A stretch of 64,000 bases of DNA from Perna viridis (taxonomy: Eukaryota): the NCBI GenBank assembly GCA_037379345.1, contig CM074511.1, positions 43,406,862 through 43,470,861 on the forward strand. The letters run 5' to 3'. Below, piece by piece: positions 42,331 to 50,534 of this stretch. Below the pieces are notes generated by a model, which saw only the letters and a list, made by a program, of their open reading frames with translations, ran no database searches and was not told where the DNA came from. Both the position numbers and the translations under genes were made by a program. The stretch's first letter is position 1. Every line of letters begins with the position of its first letter.

Positions 42331-42729
42331 ATGGTATATTTCTTTAAGGGAAATCTTTTATTAAAGTCGGTAAGTTGCTTCAAATGTGGCAGCGTTGAAG
42401 AAAGACAATCTGGGTGGTCGGGTTTCCATGGAAATTCATGTCCTAGAGAGAAATACACTAGATTCCAAGTATGCTTCCACATCCGTTTTTGCTAACATAA
42501 CATAAATTGTTTTCACGTTTTGTTCCATACGATTCAATTATCTCAAATTTGTGAAGTTATATTCATTGCATATATAAAATCCTGACTAAAAAGCACTATA
42601 CTTCGTTGTTACTCCAAAAATGACGGTACACCTAGATAAAATATGTAGTTCTTGGTAGATATTCCTCATACTTTGAAAAAAATATTCCATATCAACTTTC
42701 AAATATATGTTTTAAAATTGCTGGAATTT

Positions 42730-43660
42730 TCGATCAATACAATATTTGTCCAGTGAAGTGGACGCATTTTTCAACAACAGTCGGTATTCCAATGGGAACC
42801 AATTGTGCTCCTCTACTTGCTGACCTATTTCTTTACTCTTATGAGGCTGTCTATTGCTGATCTGATCCAAAACAGGAGCATCGTTTAGTTAGGTCCTTTG
42901 ATCTCAGTTTCCACTATATAGATGACGTATGAACATTAAACAATCCTAGTTTCGCTTATTTGATACATCCTACAAACTTGAAAAAAGGATAATATTGACA
43001 CCATGAAGTTAGCCACATATCTTGACCTACACGTAGAGATGGATGGTAAAGGAAAACTATCGACCAAACTTTATGACAAACGCGATGACTTTTCATTCCG
43101 TATTTTCAAATTTTCTTTCATTTGTGGCAACATCCCTTCAGCGCCTGCGTATAGAGTTCTCATATCACAACTTAAACGTTAAGCCAGAGTTTGCCTAAAC
43201 TACGCTTCCAGAATTTTTGTATGTATCGCTAGTCTTCTTTCAATTAGGTTTCTGGAACAGGGTTATGTTGCTACAAGATTGAAGTCATCACTACAGAAGT
43301 TTTATGGTAGTCATCATGAACTCATGGACCATTACAGTGTCTCCATCTGCACCATGAGATTTGATTTGTTCAACTTGTCATAGTTTTCCTTTCCTCTTTC
43401 GACGACCCTGCACTTTTTATGAGCAATTCGGCCGGTGTTTCTAGAAAAACAGAAGATGCTTATCCTACCGGTGCACCTGGTCTATGCTCCCAGTTTTTAG
43501 TGGAGTCCCAGTTGCTCATTTGCTTTTTTTACTTTGTATGTATGATTTTAGTTACTTCATGTTTCATGTTCTTTGTTGTGTATGTCTTCCATGTCTGGTC
43601 TTTGTTTCTGGATTACATTCTTTTGATTACCTCTATAACCTTGGTTCCCTTGATTACTCT
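42730..43660 (+). mobile_element. 5'-truncated, decayed Penelope-like retroelement: RT C-terminal half + 3' UTR
   Basis: VGIPMGTNCAPLLADLFLYSYE, YIDDV, YLDL, LYDKRDDF, NIPSAPAY, KFYG..HHEL. The ORF remnant ends at TAG 43381-43383 with no downstream endonuclease. It is followed by the 3' tail shared with many short copies. Confidence 0.85.
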
Positions 43661-43870
43661 TCCAGAAGATCTTTCGAATGTTACAGGGACCACATTGAAT
43701 TTATACCTGTACAGGAGTAACAAGTGTCGTGGTAGGACCGGAGACCTTCTTTGACACCTGTGAGTATAGAGGTTAGAAGTTTTGAAACAGGTTTGGTGAT
43801 AAATTTTGCAAATCTAGCTATGAAGCGTTGTTTTTATGGATTTTTGTGGAGTTTCGAAAGACGGTAGATC
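43661..43870 (-). mobile_element. Penelope-like RT N-terminal fragment, inverted and abutting the previous element
   Basis: Minus strand reads KLHKNP*KQRFIA..TKPVSKLLTSILTGVKEGL..GINSMW..SKDLLE. Confidence 0.8.
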
Positions 43871-44229
43871 GCGATCGTCGACTTTGGTAGAACCATTTTA
43901 TAACATGTTTAGGTATTTTCTTTTAAATTATTTAGCTAATGATTGAATTAATTATCATCATGCTATGTGAATCATATTAACTGATATAAATTCAGTTGAT
44001 TTTTTTTCTAAAAATCACTGAAGTTAATTCTACATGTTCATGTATTTAAGAAGAATCCTCAGGGTGAATTAGTCAAATGAACATACCAATTGAGAAATAT
44101 TTATGTATATTGAAATACACTATTTGAAGTCAAATAAGTATGGCACAGGTTCTAATGTCTCTGCGATTGGAAATTTAAATATAATTTTATAACAAATTTA
44201 TGTTTCAATAGAAGAAGCTCCCTTTCAAA

Positions 44230-44536
44230 AGAGTAATCAAGGGAACCTTCTAGCGTAAATTAAAAAAATGTAATCCAGGGACAAAGACCAGACATGGAAG
44301 ACAGACACACACAACAAAGAACATAAAGTAACTAAAATAATACATACAAAGTAACATAACTAAATACGCAACTCGGACACTAAAATATTGGGAGAATGTA
44401 CCAGGTGCACCGGTAGGGTAAGCGTCCTCTACTTTTCTAAAAAACACCCACCGAGTTGCTCATAAAAAGTCAAGTGCAAGGCAGACGAAAGAGGTACGAA
44501 AAAGTATGACAACTTGAACAAATCAGTTTTCATGGT
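44230..44536 (-). mobile_element. Short 3'-end copy of the Penelope-like element
   Basis: Same terminus (agagtaatcaagggaacc on the plus strand) and same internal sequence. Confidence 0.85.
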
Positions 44537-46190
44537 CCGTAACTAGGTCTGGATTATTTGGGAATTTATGCCAAGTTCGGATTCGTTAATCAGGACGGCT
44601 TTTCAGTTTCCCAGAGAGGTTGCGATTATACGAGACGGATTGTTAATGAATACGTGCAACCTTTTTGTCTTCAATTAATTTCTTATTGGTGTCGTTGCCC
44701 CCGTACTAATAGAAACACGCAGGTAGCTTCTTGTAACATTCAGACGTGCCGTCGACCTTCATGTTCTCAAAATCCGTTGGTTGACTAATAATTGATTGAC
44801 TGTGAGATTCTGGTATTTCTCTCATACTTACATGATAATGTAACATGACAGCAGGTGACTTAGATTGACTAATAAATGAAACGTACTGGGCATATGTTGC
44901 TCCTTGCTTCCCTTTCCGCTGGTCTAGAATAGAATTTCAGTGTGGTATTTGTCCATGGGAAGCAAAATTTTCCCATTGGGTTGAAAGAACCTTAGAGATA
45001 GCTCAAGATTTTGTGGAACTAAACTACTTCAGGTGCTGTACTTTTACCTTTGTCTTCAGGAATGTTGTCTTACGTTAAAATTGTTGGTAGTATGATTTGA
45101 CGTACTTATTGGTGGATTCTATTATTATCTCCCAGAACGTAAGGTGCGACATCACCACAGCAGGTATTTAGCATGAAGGTTTCTGGTTCGGTCAGATTCC
45201 TTACTTTGACAAAGTCGTAGAAGGTAGGGAAATCGAGGGAACCGCTTGATCGTCAGTGATGCCATAAATATTGAGCACTGTGCTAAGATCTTCTTTAATT
45301 AAACGTTCACTGGCAGTACTGTGGCTCCCGTAGATGTTTCTGTTCACTCTGACCTCTGATCTCGGTTTATCCTTTCAGTTTTTGACCATTGCCTCAAGTG
45401 TTAAATCAGTTCTGTTATTTTGTGTTGCTTATGGTAATATTATTTGCCTACGGTCAAGATTGTACTCAAGGCGGTATTAAGGTTACACTCGATCATCTGG
45501 GAAAACAACAGATCCTTCGTGAACGGAAACCTTGTTAACATTAATAAAGTATTAACAAGAAGTACTCAAACCCAAACTCAAAATGAAAATTTCAAAATAT
45601 GAAACAAATCTAGAACGCACAATTTCTACTAATATCTAAGCGCTTCATTATGGTCGCTAAGAACATGCTTAATACAATGAATCTTTGGGGTTTCCAATTT
45701 TGTGCTACTCATATCTATGGGTCATCCAAGTCTAACCTTTGGCCTGATGAATACACTAGGGGAAATATAGTCCACTTGTAGTAGATCGACCCAGTGGCTT
45801 CTAAATACAAAAATGCAATTTTTACACCCGCTTTGTTTCCCGTCGAAAGTCAATTCTGGTAAAAGAGGAAGAATTTAAAATTAAAATTTATGTCGTTAAG
45901 TCATATCGGAAATTATCATTTAATATCGGTCGCGACCGTAGAAGCAGGGTTTAACTATTGACAACATAATTTTTTCCAGTAGCTTATTTTTGTTTACCAT
46001 TGAACTTTTTATCTAGTAATTTTGTGTAAGGATCTAAATTTCTAACTGAATGAGTAAATTTAGCGATAGAAACTCATTAATAGCCATAACAAAATGACTT
46101 TGAATATCAAATGTATAATTGATAAAAAAATATCATATATTACCTACTTATTTTTATTTTCGTTTTGCAGGGTAGGAATTTCAGAGATAA

Positions 46191-47795
46191 ATGGCTCTCA
46201 CCAAAGAAAAACTAACCCTGTCACTATTAGTCTTATCTTGCAACGCAATGAATGACTTTGAATGGGCAAGACAATTAATTGCAAAACTAAGGGACAATGG
46301 ATGGAAAAACGTATTAACAACCTATGAATTTCCCCCTGGAAGTGAGTACTTTTCCATGATTGATGAATACATTAGGGCCGCCGATATCCTTCTAATCATT
46401 CTATCTCAATCTTCAGAACAAGAAAAGACTTTCATGAAAACAGTTAACTGTTCCATAAAAACAATTTTAGACAATGATCTAGCATGTAGAGTAATTCCAG
46501 TGGCTCTGCATCCAAAGTCAACAATACCATTTGCTTTACAAGATGTCGAAGTATTTCGTGCATGGCAAGAACAGGATGATTCAAAGCTTATTCGTGCTTT
46601 ACTAGAGACACCCGGGGAACAGGTTTTGACAAAATTTATTTCAACTCTTGTTTCTCTAAACGTCAATGAGGAAAAGGTTCGTCGGTTAAACAAAATATCG
46701 CTGCCAAGCAACTTATGCACGGACATTTCAAACATTGGGAAAAATATACTTAAACACTGGGGTGTGCGTCTTCGTGGGAACTTGTTAATCGTAGACATGT
46801 TAAAGCTTCAAAATAATGCATCGTACAATAGAATATGCTTATTTGATTTATTTTCGACTTTTTTTGGAACTGAAAGTTCAAACATTTGCTTTGTGAGACT
46901 ATATAATGTAAAGAGGTTTAATTTCCATAACTTATTTCAAAATGGACAGGTTTACGGTGACCTCGAAGGAATCTACCACACAATAATGACGGATGCTATT
47001 CCATCATTTCAACATTTTTGGTACCAGTACCGTAGAAATGGCCTGTGCCCAACAGATAATGCAGAACTAGCATTTAAACCAGTAGTGCAAGCAAAATTTG
47101 CTTGGCATAAAGATGAAATACATTCACCCCAATATGAAAAATATGAGGAACGCATGAAAACACTAGAAAACTTTGTAGTTGACAATTTTCTCGTTAAACA
47201 TGCTTTAGCAATTTCTGGGTTCTTCGGAGTAGGAGTTTTAGATTTCGTTCAGTGCTATTACTGTGGTTCTTGCATTCGGATACTTAATTTAAAATATCAT
47301 GAGGGGTTTTACTTTGGCAAGTGTCCATTAAACGACATGAAGATGTCAGTGATGAAATCAGTGTGTGAGAATACTGTTATGCTGAAAAAATTAGGATTGG
47401 CAACATTCGAAACTAGGAAGGAAAGAAAAGATTCCTTCAAGCCATTGCTTGAAAATGACCAGTCTTATGATATAAATCTTCTAGACAGGTTTGTAGATGC
47501 AGGCTTTTTCTATAGAGGGACTCGTGAGGATACAATATGTTATGCATGTGATTTAAGTCTTACAAATATCAAAGATTATACAAACCCAGAATTGATTCAC
47601 AAGACATTCTCACCCGATTGTTCCCACATGAGGACCGTGGAAGTGAAAAACCCAGAGTCCGGTCTTTTGAACAAGAATGTACATCCCTATCTAGAACTAG
47701 AAATACTGTGCAGAAATGAAAACATGTTTCCAGAACTTAACAACAATACTGCTACCGTCGATGATGATACGCAATCATATTTTTACGAAGACTAA
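46191..47795 (+). CDS. TIR-like domain + two BIR (IAP repeat) domain protein, 534 aa, single coding exon
   Basis: Long uninterrupted ORF in AT-rich DNA, preceded by a splice acceptor (ttttgcag, 46170) and followed by AATAAA near 47946. aa 10-138 follow the TIR pattern (LLVLSC..DFEWARQLIAKLRDNG; EFPPG..IDEYIRAADILLIILS; RVIPVAL; IPFAL). aa 315-380 are a degenerate BIR (EERMKTL..LAISGFFGVG..VQCYYCG..H..C). aa 406-480 are a canonical BIR (ERKDSF..AGFFYRG..CYAC-x16-H-x6-C). Confidence 0.88.
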   Translation: MALTKEKLTLSLLVLSCNAMNDFEWARQLIAKLRDNGWKNVLTTYEFPPGSEYFSMIDEYIRAADILLIILSQSSEQEKTFMKTVNCSIKTILDNDLACRVIPVALHPKSTIPFALQDVEVFRAWQEQDDSKLIRALLETPGEQVLTKFISTLVSLNVNEEKVRRLNKISLPSNLCTDISNIGKNILKHWGVRLRGNLLIVDMLKLQNNASYNRICLFDLFSTFFGTESSNICFVRLYNVKRFNFHNLFQNGQVYGDLEGIYHTIMTDAIPSFQHFWYQYRRNGLCPTDNAELAFKPVVQAKFAWHKDEIHSPQYEKYEERMKTLENFVVDNFLVKHALAISGFFGVGVLDFVQCYYCGSCIRILNLKYHEGFYFGKCPLNDMKMSVMKSVCENTVMLKKLGLATFETRKERKDSFKPLLENDQSYDINLLDRFVDAGFFYRGTREDTICYACDLSLTNIKDYTNPELIHKTFSPDCSHMRTVEVKNPESGLLNKNVHPYLELEILCRNENMFPELNNNTATVDDDTQSYFYED

Positions 47796-50534
47796 TGCGT
47801 GATATAAAAATGTTCATCCTTTTTGTACTTTTACTTGTTAATATTTAGATAGATAACCGAGTATTTAACAATGCTATAATATTGTGTTCATACAAAATGG
47901 GTTTTTTTTATATTTGGTATCACGATTATCATGTATTTGAAAGGGAATAAATAAATTAGAGGCTCTAGAGAGCCTGGATCGCTTACATGGTCAAAAATAG
48001 ACTTTTAACATTACTGTACTATTGTCACAAGAATCATTTAATCAATGGAAAGCATTTAACTTATCTACCTGGTTTTCGTATCATAAAATAAGTCTGTCGT
48101 TGCCTTCTACTTAAAGTTTACAGCACTAAGCCATACTTTTCAATTTTTAATCCCTAGGGACATCTCTAGCAACATCCCTTTCAGTTTTAGTGGGTCAGAT
48201 TAATTTGTACAGATACCGGAGACGTTGCAGTTCTCCCCAGATGGTGGGAATATTTTATACATATAATGTGACATAAACAAAAGTCCGACGCAACTGACAG
48301 ATGTAAATTCCAAAAAGGAAACGATTGCCTTTCCTATCTTAAAACAGCTATGTTAGTATTTGTATAATGCAATCGGAGTTATATTTTTTTTTCGAGGACG
48401 GTTAAGTTCTTGACAACAGCAAAAAAGAAGAGCCGAGATACACGTATGCACATCCACGTTTTCCCGTAAAAAGTGAAAAATATAGAAAAGACTCGAAAAC
48501 TTTCAGAAAAGATTTTTAATTTTTACTGAAACGTAATCTTAACCTTTATATATATACTGATATTACGTGTATGTCGGTCATCTTTAGACATGAGCCTCCG
48601 TTCTATGCTTAGTGCAGTTAAGAATGATAATAAAGTGATATTTAATTTTCATTATTTAAACTAAGTTTTGAATTTTTTGTTAAATTCATTGACCACTGAA
48701 AGAAGTATTGCACTTAAATGAAACTTTTGGTAAAATAAAAAAATTGATGTCATTGTCGCATATGATACTTTTATGAAATTACTTTACATTTCACTTTGAT
48801 CAAGCCAGGATCATAGTGGCTATTTTCATTTTTTCTGCTTCATTCTTAACTTTGCCTTTTCGTGTATCATTTAAGGTTCCCTTAAAGTCCATATCTATAA
48901 AATTCTCGTTGAATTGTTTTATTTCACCAGTTAAAGTATGAATTATATATAGCTCTGAAACTTTGTTACAAGTCTTGATGTGTGATTCAAACTAAAACAT
49001 GTTAAAAAAAATAAACAAAAAATTGACTTCTACATTTCACAACAAATACAATTGGTAAACAACATATTTTTTAAATAAATCTTCAGCTTTAAAGACGCAA
49101 ATTTACATATTCCTGATTCTAACATCAATAATTAATAAAATATTATAATATTCATTAAAATCTGGTTATTATTTCATATAAGCGCACGCTTGCCCTGCAC
49201 TAGATTTTTAGGTCACAGAATATGTGCACCTCCAAACAAAACTATGCCCTGGTAAAGCTATACATTTATATACAATTTGTATTAACACTAATGTTGTTTG
49301 CAAAATATATCAGTATTAACATGTTTTATTAAACAATAGACCATGCATATGGGTAGATATCTGTATTAGGAAGTATTTGGTAAGTTGTCTGGGATTTATC
49401 ATTCATATTAGTGAATTGTAAAAAGAAATAATTTGTGTTGTAATATCCTGGATTTTGATTCTAACTTAACCTTAATATATCCCTCCAATTTGTGATATAT
49501 TTTCAGTTCTGTAATTTTGTTATTACCTTAATATACGATGTAAAATAAAACGAAAAGTACAACGAGGCCATATCATGTCACCAATCTGTTGTCTACCTGT
49601 ACTTTTATGAAATAGAAGAAATACATAACCAACTGAATAGTGAAACACAACATGCGCTTACAATCAATGCAGAAAGAAGACCAGAACTATTTTACTCTTG
49701 TGACGAAAGAAACTTTATTATTTAAACCAGTACAATAAGAGATATAAAGGATTTACTTTGTAAATTAAGGATAATCGAAGCAAAGCCAATGGAACGAAAA
49801 ACATTCAGAAGACTACATTTCGAAGTCAAACCAGTTCAGCTTGGTACGACAACTAAGTGAAAGATGTTGAGAATTTTCGAAACCTCGCTAAAGTAACTCG
49901 AAAAATACAGTTCAGTGACGTATGGAAAGAATGCAGTGTCATTTCTTATTCTACTCTCATTTTTGAATGAAGTAGGTGCCCTTGCTCGTTAGTTTTTTTG
50001 TATTTTTTAATCATTGTTTCTTTTAAAAACGTCAGTTGAACTTTTGTATTTTCACATTAAATCTTTCATTTGATTTTTGTCCATTTTACCGTTTTGACCC
50101 ATGTTCTCTGTTAGAGACGTCTGTTACACTTAAAAATGTCTGTTTCTGTTGATGAACAATGGAGGAAAACATCTTGTAAAATTAGCGGATTTTATTAAAA
50201 TGCAGTTTAAGAATAAAATCTAGTGAAGTGAATACGCATCTAAAAATGTGCTTATTTGAAAGCTTGTACGTAAGAACACTTAGTCTTCTGTATTCTAATT
50301 TTTTTGTATGTTAGATTGTAATCCAAGCCTCTGTAAATGCCACCCGTGGGTAATGTAGTTGAATTTATTGACAATGTAACCATATAAACGTAGCTGGCAT
50401 CTATACTGTTCTCTGAACTGCTTTCGGTGTGTAGGATTTTTGACAACCATAAAATAATACCACCAGAGTAATAATTAATATAAGACTTCTGAATGTTATA
50501 ATTACCAAGCAATCAAACACACTGTTTATATATA

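What the first reader, a model, noticed from the sequence alone, without database searches (positions are those of the whole stretch)
46191..47795. Intronless TIR-BIR fusion gene: candidate adaptor joining Toll/TIR signalling to an IAP-type module
Seen: a 534-aa single-exon ORF with a TIR-pattern N-terminus (aa 10-138, BB-loop-like EFPPG) and two BIR repeats at the C-terminus, with no RING. Established: TIR domains nucleate TLR/MyD88 signalling, BIR domains define IAPs (normally combined with RING, CARD, UBA, UBC or NACHT), and both families are expanded in bivalves. I do not know of a characterised TIR+BIR architecture. Inference: a lineage-specific domain fusion that could recruit BIR partners (TRAF, TAB, caspases) directly to TIR assemblies and so link pathogen sensing to cell-death control. 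The ORF is intact while all neighbouring elements are decayed, which suggests it is under selection.
Basis: partly seen in the sequence, partly recalled or inferred. Interest (0 to 1): 0.85.

Follow-up and report, generated by a model that had tools for sequence, protein, structure and literature searches.

The report
Mussel TIR–BIR fusion gene, expressed
A real, transcribed mussel gene encodes a cytosolic protein that joins a Toll-type TIR signalling domain to two IAP-type BIR repeats; it belongs to a small undescribed family so far seen only in mytilid mussels, and its function is untested.

Summary
Window 46191-47795 (+) is an intact 534-codon ORF, the only long ORF in 64 kb of 32% G+C DNA. 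It encodes a TIR domain (Pfam TIR_2 above threshold; the model matches MyD88, TRAM and SARM1 TIRs), an unassigned alpha/beta middle domain, two BIR repeats and no RING.

Three corrections:
- The gene is not intronless. A splice acceptor lies 20 nt before the ATG, and RNA-type assemblies from three studies break exactly there and carry other 5' letters. Only the coding part is single-exon.
- Only BIR2 has the canonical zinc spacing. BIR1 has a shortened zinc loop. Neither keeps the Trp/acidic residues of the caspase/Smac-binding groove.
- It is not unique. A search of 1.84 billion proteins found about 14 relatives with the same layout. Every named one is from Mytilus, filed as 'BIRC' or 'uncharacterized'. 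Two carry an ectodomain and a membrane helix in front.

This genome has one copy. I found no paper describing TIR+BIR, but Gerdol et al. 2017 could not be read.

Most likely it is a cytosolic TIR adaptor or regulator whose BIRs act as protein-docking modules, not caspase inhibitors. Constraint is weak (dN/dS about 0.5 in a sister clade). I rate it a new variant of known kinds, of moderate interest.

The parts
46150..46170 (+). 3' splice site of a 5' UTR intron: polypyrimidine tract with the AG at 46169-46170
   Evidence: Sequence read. Contigs of runs X1, X3 and X6 start matching at 46169 and carry 1654, 47 and 27 further 5' letters that are not on 42400-46168. Depth is 0 over 45946-46142 in all three runs, about 0 back to 44567 in X1 and X3, and only 1-4 there in X6.
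46171..46190 (+). 5' UTR part of the coding exon, with in-frame TAG (46173-46175) and TAA (46188-46190) that close the frame upstream of the ATG
   Evidence: No coding exon can join in this frame. The closest relatives P0002 and P0003 start at the same position with M-A.
46191..47795 (+). Coding sequence, 534 aa plus stop, in a single exon
   Evidence: Covered end to end at even depth (17-50) by one contig in each of three RNA-type runs. In the stranded RNA run X21, reads lie only in the first-mate-on-minus orientation, which points to a plus-strand RNA.
46218..46604 (+). TIR domain (aa 10-138). Box-1-like strand LLVLS, BB loop EFPPG at aa 46-50, box-3-like FRAW at aa 122-125
   Evidence: Pfam TIR_2, E 6.9e-12. 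Model pLDDT about 80. Foldseek target TM-scores: MyD88 0.70-0.71, TRAM 0.63-0.66, SARM1 0.57-0.61. A family profile hits the TLR15/TLR2 TIR at E 2.9e-5 and the oyster TIR-STING at 5e-4.
46605..46706 (+). Linker or long helix (aa 139-172), modelled with low confidence
   Evidence: pLDDT 41-66; poorly conserved in alignment A2.
46707..47108 (+). Conserved middle alpha/beta domain (aa 173-306) of unknown family. Motifs: WG (189-190), ICLxDLF, FVRLY, WYQYRRNG (277-284)
   Evidence: No Pfam hit. Conserved across the family. Model pLDDT 77-85. No significant Foldseek match. Best VIA Z is 5.4, to the STAS-like SiaC, with several STAS folds at Z 3.3-3.9, all below the noise level the tool states.
47127..47324 (+). 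BIR1 (aa 313-378), degenerate. Zinc-site spacing is CX2C-X11-H-X7-C; the Trp position holds Leu365
   Evidence: Matches to solved BIRs stop at about aa 362-364. Clade-mates P0002 and P0003 share the 3-4 residue deletion, while the other clades keep the canonical spacing.
47415..47630 (+). BIR2 (aa 409-480). Canonical C450-X2-C453-X16-H470-X6-C477. The Trp position holds Ile460 and the acidic position holds Thr464
   Evidence: Best Pfam BIR stretch is aa 430-480. Best sequence matches among solved structures are NAIP and cIAP BIRs. Foldseek: cIAP1 BIR3 and XIAP BIR2, target TM-scores 0.6-0.7. The reference motif is taken from the papers seen.
47685..47702 (+). Family-wide C-terminal motif PYLELE (aa 499-504), predicted as a beta strand at 500-507
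   Evidence: Present in every full-length family member in alignment A2. Strand E500-507 has pLDDT about 77. Its function is unknown.
47946..47955 (+). Two overlapping AATAAA signals 150 nt after the stop; use not shown
   Evidence: RNA-type contigs run on past 48300 at similar depth (X3 by 1015 nt), so the 3' end is not fixed.

Best explanation
This is a functional, transcribed gene of a bivalve, most probably a mytilid mussel. It encodes a soluble cytosolic protein with this layout: TLR-type TIR domain, a conserved middle domain of unknown fold, a degenerate BIR, a canonical-spacing BIR, and a short conserved C-terminal strand (PYLELE).

Shown here:
- The gene model, including a 5' UTR intron and a single coding exon, plus splicing and plus-strand transcription.
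- The domain identities.
- A homologous family in Mytilus that includes forms with an ectodomain and a membrane helix.
- A single copy in this genome.

Inferred mechanism:
- The TIR joins heterotypic TIR-TIR assemblies below Toll-like or family-own membrane receptors.
- The middle domain plus the BIR pair serve as a docking platform for signalling proteins, in the manner of type I BIRs (XIAP BIR1 with TAB1, cIAP1 BIR1 with TRAF2). They do not act as a caspase/Smac-binding inhibitor or as an E3 ligase, because the protein has no RING and no IBM-groove residues.
- Whether the protein passes the signal on or damps it is open.
For: - The ORF is intact and far beyond chance.
- TIR_2 and BIR both score above Pfam thresholds.
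- The TIR fold matches MyD88, TRAM and SARM1. The family profile is closest to animal TLR, TIR-STING and SIGIRR TIRs. The BB-loop Pro-Gly is kept.
- It is spliced and expressed. Three RNA-type assemblies from three studies cover the exon evenly, stop at the acceptor and carry foreign 5' letters, and the intron is silent. Stranded RNA reads have one orientation. 20 runs from 7 studies hold the stretch.
- There are full-length relatives at 23-37% identity with the same domain order. They form four well-supported clades.
- In M. trossulus the whole TIR-to-BIR2 module is one exon behind five exons that encode signal peptide, ectodomain and TM helix. The intron lies at the position matching the window's UTR intron.
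- TM helices occur in P0006 and P0151 and not in the window protein.
- No RING. Trp and the acidic residue are replaced in both BIRs (with the motif).
Against: - No functional or interaction data exist, and no expression data after immune challenge.
- Constraint looks weak. Polymorphisms are 4 non-synonymous (L10P, T223S, K307E, D423V) against 1 synonymous. dN/dS is 0.51 between M. coruscus and M. californianus orthologues of a sister clade, and the M. californianus copy has a frameshift.
- The BIR1 zinc site may be broken.
- The BB loop is not conserved in all relatives; P0002 lacks the Pro-Gly.
- The runs X1, X3 and X6 are labelled RNA only by the tool's guess. My reading rests on their depth profile and small assembly size.
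- The one certain RNA run shows only 1-4x depth.
Confidence: 0.55

Rival explanations
1. Enzymatic 'executioner' TIR. The TIR is an NAD+-cleaving enzyme like SARM1, plant and bacterial TIRs, and the BIR pair or middle domain is the sensor or regulatory part, so activation would cause NAD+ loss or signal-nucleotide production and cell death.
For: The Pfam match is to TIR_2, the model that also covers SARM1 and bacterial TIRs. Foldseek lists SPARTA TIR-APAZ and SARM1 among the hits. Most relatives have a conserved Glu early in the predicted alpha-C helix, in a V-E motif.
Against: In the window protein that family Glu is Asn86, and residues 82-93 of the helix hold no acidic residue. The family profile sits nearest to TLR, SIGIRR and TIR-STING TIRs, not to enzymatic ones. 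I could not superpose residues, so the catalytic position is not settled.
Confidence: 0.1
2. Classical IAP aimed at TIR complexes. The BIRs bind and block caspases or IBM-bearing antagonists, as the first reader suggested for caspases, and the TIR brings this anti-death activity to receptor complexes.
For: The BIR domain is detected above threshold, and BIR2 has canonical zinc spacing. Foldseek matches cIAP1 BIR3 and XIAP BIR2. In the clades that include the membrane-bound relatives, BIR1 keeps Trp and Glu/Asp-Pro at the groove positions.
Against: In the window protein the groove Trp is Leu365 in BIR1 and Ile460 in BIR2. The acidic residue four positions on is Tyr or Thr. BIR1 lacks 5 residues of the loop. 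There is no RING for ubiquitylation.
Confidence: 0.1
3. A gene drifting towards loss. It is transcribed and still open but no longer has a function, being the single remnant in this species of a family that is larger in Mytilus.
For: Single copy here against at least four clades in Mytilus. Degenerate BIR1. Polymorphism ratio of 4 non-synonymous to 1 synonymous. dN/dS 0.51 and a frameshifted copy in a relative. Low depth in the one certain RNA run.
Against: A 534-codon frame in 32% G+C DNA cannot stay open for long without selection. Start position, all domains and the C-terminal motif are kept at 36-37% identity to the Mytilus clade-mates. The gene is spliced, and the stretch is held by runs of seven studies.
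Confidence: 0.12
4. A recent retrocopy of a multi-exon parent. This would make the single-exon coding sequence a by-product of retroposition.
For: The coding part is one exon. Song et al. 2021 report that many bivalve IAPs are intronless retrocopies.
Against: A 5' UTR intron is present and used. The M. trossulus relative has the same module in one exon inside a six-exon gene, so the single exon is ancestral. There is no other copy of the TIR or middle part in this genome that could be a parent. No poly(A) tract follows the 3' end.
Confidence: 0.03

Closest known systems
Cytosolic TIR adaptors of the Toll pathway (MyD88, TRAM/TICAM-2, TIRAP) and the uncharacterised bivalve 'TIR-DC' proteins
   Same: A soluble protein with one TLR-type TIR. 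The fold matches MyD88 and TRAM. BB-loop Pro-Gly and box-like motifs are present. Bivalves are reported to have many uncharacterised cytosolic TIR-DC proteins.
   Different: It has no death domain. Instead it carries a novel middle domain and two BIRs. I could not check whether any of the TIR-DC families of Gerdol et al. 2017 corresponds to it, because the paper is not held.
RING-less IAP/BIRC proteins, and type I BIRs such as XIAP BIR1 and cIAP1 BIR1
   Same: Two BIR repeats, one with canonical CX2CX16HX6C. There is no IBM-groove signature, as in type I BIRs that bind TAB1 or TRAF2 (established knowledge). The best sequence matches among solved structures are NAIP and cIAP BIRs.
   Different: An N-terminal TIR and a middle domain are found in none of 85 other BIR proteins scanned and in none of the IAP surveys read. 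BIR1 has a shortened zinc loop.
Ig-ectodomain TIR receptors (IL-1R/SIGIRR type)
   Same: The relatives P0006 (M. trossulus) and P0151 have a signal peptide, an ectodomain with an Ig-like Cys/Trp/Tyr-x-Cys pattern (my reading), one TM helix and a cytosolic TIR. SIGIRR is among the profile hits.
   Different: The window protein has no ectodomain or TM helix. The relatives carry the middle-BIR-BIR tail, which IL-1R-type receptors lack. Pfam does not call the ectodomain.
Oyster TIR-STING and other lineage-specific TIR fusions in bivalves
   Same: A bivalve-specific fusion of a TIR to a second immune module. Oyster TIR-STING (6wt6) is the second-best solved-structure hit of the family profile.
   Different: The fused module is BIR, not STING, and there is no evidence of nucleotide sensing.

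Membership tests
TIR domain superfamily | Profile match above the curated threshold | tested here: met
   Pfam TIR_2: 46.4 bits against a cut-off of 28, covering profile positions 4-121 of 122. PF01582 TIR is below its cut-off, at 15.9 against 21.3.
TIR domain superfamily | Flavodoxin-like alpha/beta fold that superposes on solved TIRs | tested here: met
   AlphaFold2 pLDDT is about 80 over aa 12-125. Foldseek probability is 1.00 with target TM-scores of 0.57-0.71 to MyD88, TRAM and SARM1 TIRs; SPARTA TIR-APAZ chains also hit (probability 1.00) but score only 0.23-0.30 because the chains are far longer than a TIR.
TIR domain superfamily | BB loop with conserved Pro-Gly, plus box 1 and box 3 motifs | tested here: met
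   EFPPG at aa 46-50. G50 is invariant in alignment A4. Box-1-like LLVLS and box-3-like FRAW are present.
NAD+-cleaving TIR enzymes (SARM1, plant and bacterial type) | Catalytic Glu in the alpha-C region | tested here: inconclusive
   The family-conserved Glu is Asn86 in the window protein, and there is no acidic residue at aa 82-93. No residue-level superposition was available.
IAP/BIR-containing proteins | BIR profile match above threshold | tested here: met
   Pfam BIR: 56.2 bits against a cut-off of 22.9, in two stretches.
IAP/BIR-containing proteins | Zinc site CX2CX16HX6C in each repeat | tested here: inconclusive
   BIR2 meets it (C450, C453, H470, C477). BIR1 does not: its spacing is X2, X11, X7. 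Zinc binding itself cannot be tested here.
Type II (IBM-binding) BIR | Trp six residues after the second Cys, and an Asp/Glu four residues further on | tested here: not met
   BIR1 has Leu365 and Tyr369. BIR2 has Ile460 and Thr464. The motif is as quoted.
RING-type IAP E3 ligases (XIAP, cIAP) | C-terminal RING | tested here: not met
   No RING hit at E up to 10. The C-terminal 45 residues are low-confidence and hold only one Cys.
MyD88-type adaptor | Death domain beside the TIR | tested here: not met
   No death-fold hit in Pfam or in Foldseek.
Mytilid TIR-middle-BIR-BIR family (defined here) | Collinear full-length homology, WYxYRRNG motif and C-terminal PYLE(L/I/V)E | tested here: met
   A single phmmer stretch covers aa 1-506 to P0002 (E 1e-94) and aa 17-505 to P0006. 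Motifs are seen in alignment A2. The window protein groups with P0002, P0003 and P0009 at 100/99 support.
Retrocopy | No introns, a poly(A) tail and a multi-exon parent | tested here: not met
   A 5' UTR intron is used. No parent exists in this genome. The single coding exon is shared with a six-exon relative.

The most novel reading that the evidence does not exclude
The family is a mussel-specific signalling system of its own. Ig-like membrane receptors carry a cytosolic TIR-middle-BIR-BIR tail, and soluble paralogues such as this gene co-assemble with them through TIR and/or the new middle domain. This would couple pathogen sensing directly to a BIR platform (TRAF/TAB-like or cell-death partners) without the MyD88-IRAK route. 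The middle domain and the PYLELE strand would then be new interaction modules.
Probability: 0.2. Interest if true: 0.75.

Novelty: new variant of a known kind. Interest (0 to 1): 0.55.

Why it matters
Bivalves have the largest Toll-like receptor and IAP repertoires known, but how the many receptors connect to downstream pathways and to cell-death control is largely unknown. This family joins the two expanded domain types in one protein. It exists in both soluble and membrane-receptor forms, so it is a concrete and testable candidate link between them.

The finding also has an annotation consequence. Current annotation files these genes as ordinary 'BIRC' or 'uncharacterized' proteins, and the TIR goes undetected by Pfam in about half of the relatives.

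The caveats are that function is untested, the family looks narrow (mytilids) and fast-evolving, and domain shuffling in bivalve immune genes is itself well known.

Tried and rejected
- Word-indexed protein searches found only the protein itself, whether I used the whole protein, aa 1-300 or the family profile. The exhaustive HMMER search was needed to find relatives.
- The ESM Atlas gave only generic TIR clusters at scores of 0.78 or less for the whole protein, and nothing for aa 140-534.
- Middle domain: no Pfam hit and no significant Foldseek hit. The best VIA-align Z is 5.4, to the STAS-like SiaC, below the tool's stated noise level. I therefore do not assign a fold.
- No remnants of ectodomain or TM exons like those of P0006 or P0151 were found anywhere in the window (tblastn, best E 0.07).
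- Two Logan contigs that encode the protein (L001, L035) are collinear with the genome, intron end included. They are DNA or unspliced RNA and did not give the 5' exon.
- The sequence and position of the 5' exon could not be obtained, because the single reads call did not print those loose ends.
- The species name could not be obtained. Exact look-ups of six other ORFs of this genome returned no named record. 'Perna viridis-like' is only my memory of a 723-Mb, 15-chromosome mussel genome and is not used as evidence.
- Gerdol et al. 2017 (TIR-DC families) and Huang et al. 2008 (amphioxus) are not held. The supplement of the 2026 IAP survey is not held either.
- I sent no complex prediction, because I claim no specific binding pair.
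Full report
**1. The observation**

Window 46191-47795 (+) is an ATG-started ORF of 534 codons. It is the only ORF longer than 140 aa in the whole 64-kb window. The window has 32% G+C, so about 7.6% of random codons would be stops, and 534 open codons have a chance of about 6e-19.

Pfam finds three things and nothing else:
- TIR_2 at aa 16-137, E 6.9e-12, 46.4 bits against a gathering score of 28.
- BIR in two stretches, E 5.2e-15, 56.2 bits against 22.9.
- No RING, CARD, UBA, UBC or NACHT.

The description is therefore correct in its main points.

**2. Gene model and expression**

- Acceptor: immediately upstream of the ATG lies a textbook 3' splice site, a polypyrimidine run ending in AG at 46169-46170.
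- Start codon: in-frame TAG and TAA codons lie between the acceptor and the ATG, so the protein must start at this ATG.
- Runs that hold the stretch: 20 public runs from 7 studies.
- Contigs: I laid four runs on 42400-48300. In each of X1, X3 and X6 (three studies) one contig covers the exon at even depth (17, 21 and 50). Each begins to match exactly at 46169 and carries 1654, 47 or 27 further 5' letters that lie nowhere on the 3.8 kb upstream.
- Intron depth: 0 directly before the acceptor (45946-46142) in all three runs, about 0 from 44567 in X1 and X3, and 1-4 there in X6.
- Nature of the runs: they are labelled RNA only by the tool's guess. An exon-shaped profile, together with total assembly sizes of 60-100 Mb for a 723-Mb genome, makes RNA the only sensible reading.
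- Strand: the one run on record as stranded RNA (X21) gives low depth (1-4) over the ORF and only in the first-mate-on-minus orientation. This is what a plus-strand RNA gives in most stranded libraries.
- 3' end: contigs run on beyond 48300, so the 3' end is open. Two overlapping AATAAA signals sit at 47946-47955.

So the gene is transcribed and spliced. 'Intronless' holds for the coding part only.

**3. Domains**

An AlphaFold2 model built on the family alignment has mean pLDDT 74. It shows a TIR-like alpha/beta unit at aa 12-125, a low-confidence helix, a well-predicted alpha/beta middle domain at aa 173-306, two BIR-like units, and a short strand at aa 500-507.

TIR:
- Foldseek against the PDB gives TRAM, MyD88 and SARM1 TIRs with target TM-scores of 0.57-0.71, plus SPARTA TIR-APAZ chains (target TM-scores only 0.23-0.30 because those chains are much longer than a TIR). 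It also gives cIAP1 and XIAP BIRs at 0.6-0.7.
- A profile of the family's TIR region hits the TLR15/TLR2 TIR (E 2.9e-5), the oyster TIR-STING fusion (5e-4), SIGIRR and Hydra TRR-2. This is an animal receptor/adaptor-type TIR.
- Most relatives have a Glu early in the predicted alpha-C helix. The window protein has Asn86 there and no acidic residue at aa 82-93. I could not superpose residues on SARM1, so the NADase question is open, but it leans negative.

BIRs:
- BIR2 has the canonical C450-X2-C453-X16-H470-X6-C477.
- BIR1 reads C355-X2-C358-X11-H370-X7-C378.
- The alignment shows that the window protein and its two closest relatives share a 3-4 residue deletion in this loop, while the other clades keep the canonical spacing.
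- The published motif is C-X2-C-X6-W-X3-D-X5-H-X6-C (quoted). Against it, the Trp is Leu365 in BIR1 and Ile460 in BIR2, and the acidic residue is Tyr369 and Thr464. Neither repeat looks like an IBM-binding (type II) BIR.

Middle domain: it has no Pfam hit and no significant Foldseek hit. It shows only a weak, sub-noise resemblance to STAS-like folds, with best Z 5.4. I leave it unassigned.

**4. Relatives**

Word-indexed searches found only the protein itself. The exhaustive HMMER search of 1.84 billion representatives found a distinct set of proteins that match from the TIR through BIR2 in one stretch:
- P0002, 514 aa, 36% identity, E 1e-94.
- P0003, P0004, P0005, P0006, P0007, P0008 and P0010.
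- Fragments P0009, P0011, P0014, P0016, P0019 and P0029.

Every member that carries a name is from Mytilus (M. edulis, M. coruscus, M. trossulus, M. californianus). They are annotated 'BIRC4/XIAP', 'BIRC2_3', 'BIRC1/NAIP' or 'uncharacterized protein'. Pfam detects the TIR in only about half of them, and then mostly below threshold.

The alignment shows these conserved family features:
- WG, ICLxDLF and FxRxxxV.
- WYxYRRNG.
- Both BIRs.
- A C-terminal PYLE(L/I/V)E.

A maximum-likelihood tree gives four well-supported clades. The window protein groups with P0002, P0003 and P0009 at 100/99 support.

P0006 (M. trossulus, 734 aa) and P0151 (834 aa) have an N-terminal hydrophobic leader, an ectodomain and one strong TM segment before the TIR. 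The P0006 ectodomain has an Ig-like pattern by my reading, but Pfam does not call it.

In the M. trossulus genome the whole TIR-to-BIR2 module (aa 210-734) is one exon. It is preceded by five exons for leader, ectodomain and TM. That intron lies within a few codons of the position of the window gene's UTR intron. The single coding exon is therefore the ancestral structure and not a sign of retroposition.

In the window's own genome, the protein and the family profile hit only this locus with the TIR and middle parts. More than 70 other loci match the BIR part only. No ectodomain-like exons lie in the window.

Among 85 other BIR proteins from the hit list, none carries a TIR.

**5. Selection**

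Evidence for constraint is indirect. The frame is open, the start position is conserved, and all modules are kept at 36-37% identity.

Direct measures are weak:
- Alleles in other runs differ by L10P, T223S, K307E and D423V, against one synonymous change.
- The M. coruscus and M. californianus orthologues of a sister clade give dN/dS of 0.51 over 488 codons. The M. californianus copy is frameshifted within BIR1.

This is a fast-evolving family, as is common for lineage-specific immune genes.

**6. Literature**

- No paper in the searchable library contains 'TIR-BIR', 'BIR-TIR' or similar phrases in this sense.
- The oyster IAP study (Witkop et al. 2022, PMC8917759), the hard-clam IAP study (Song et al. 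2021, PMC7831173) and the 2026 survey of 2,843 metazoan IAPs with 121 architectures (PMC13159474) do not mention a TIR partner in their main texts.
- Saco et al. 2023 (PMC10279657) state that bivalve cytosolic TIR-DC proteins are largely uncharacterised.
- The key catalogue of bivalve TIR-DC families (Gerdol et al. 2017) is not held. I cannot exclude that the architecture is listed there.

**7. Reading**

Most likely (0.55) this is a cytosolic TIR adaptor or regulator. Its TIR would join receptor TIR assemblies, and its middle domain and non-IBM BIRs would dock signalling proteins. The direction of the effect is unknown.

Rivals:
- An NAD-cleaving TIR with BIR as sensor (0.10).
- A true caspase-directed IAP delivered to TIR complexes (0.10).
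- A transcribed gene drifting towards loss (0.12).
- A retrocopy (0.03).

The organism is a bivalve whose nearest protein relatives are all Mytilus at 37% identity or less, so probably a mytilid of another genus. The species name could not be established with the tools.

**8. Verdict**

The gene is real and expressed, and the domain combination is genuinely unusual. It is part of a small, apparently mytilid-restricted family that includes receptor-like members and a new middle domain. It is not described in the literature I could search, but it is already present, mis-named, in public databases. I rate it a new variant of known kinds (TIR adaptors and receptors, IAP-like proteins), of moderate interest, with function entirely untested.

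Noticed in passing
window 43250-44540: Two inverted arms (43351-43638 and 44248-44536, 81-85% complementary) belong to a very high-copy element. Summed contig depth in the RNA-type runs is 1e4-1e5, with many joints and loose ends. It is probably a MITE/SINE-like repeat pair about 1.7 kb upstream of the gene.
   Followed up: partly
window 47685-47702 (aa 499-504) and alignment A2: A PYLE(L/I/V)E motif after BIR2 is kept in every full-length family member and is modelled as a beta strand. It contains a Y-x-x-L pattern. Its function is unknown.
   Followed up: partly
own genome G000: C14 at 14.9, 19.9, 20.5 and 22.7-23.2 Mb; C6 at 1.7, 2.3, 16.5-16.8 and 30-35 Mb; C3 at 1.7-1.9 Mb: At least 70 BIR-matching loci lie in clusters. 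Many are single open frames of 400-570 aa, for example L023 with 541 aa, two BIRs and no RING called. This is a large IAP expansion, as reported for other bivalves.
   Followed up: partly
P0012/P0161 (not in the window): One of the best BIR hits is a 1297-aa protein with six BIR stretches from the bacterium 'Candidatus Endonucleobacter bathymodioli', a parasite of deep-sea mussels. BIR repeats in a bacterium suggest uptake from the host.
   Followed up: no
P0030 (not in the window): A 1314-aa protein carries seven BIR stretches followed by FIIND, UPA and CARD, that is, an NLRP1/CARD8-type C-terminus on an IAP. I did not look up its source organism.
   Followed up: no
L037:4100-4540 (M. californianus) and L036:2701-3000 (M. 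coruscus): Annotation problems in two relatives. The M. californianus gene model stops inside BIR1, but BIR2 and the PYLEIE tail continue in the +1 frame, which means a frameshift or an assembly error. The M. coruscus model starts about 100 codons too late and cuts off the TIR, although the frame is open upstream.
   Followed up: partly
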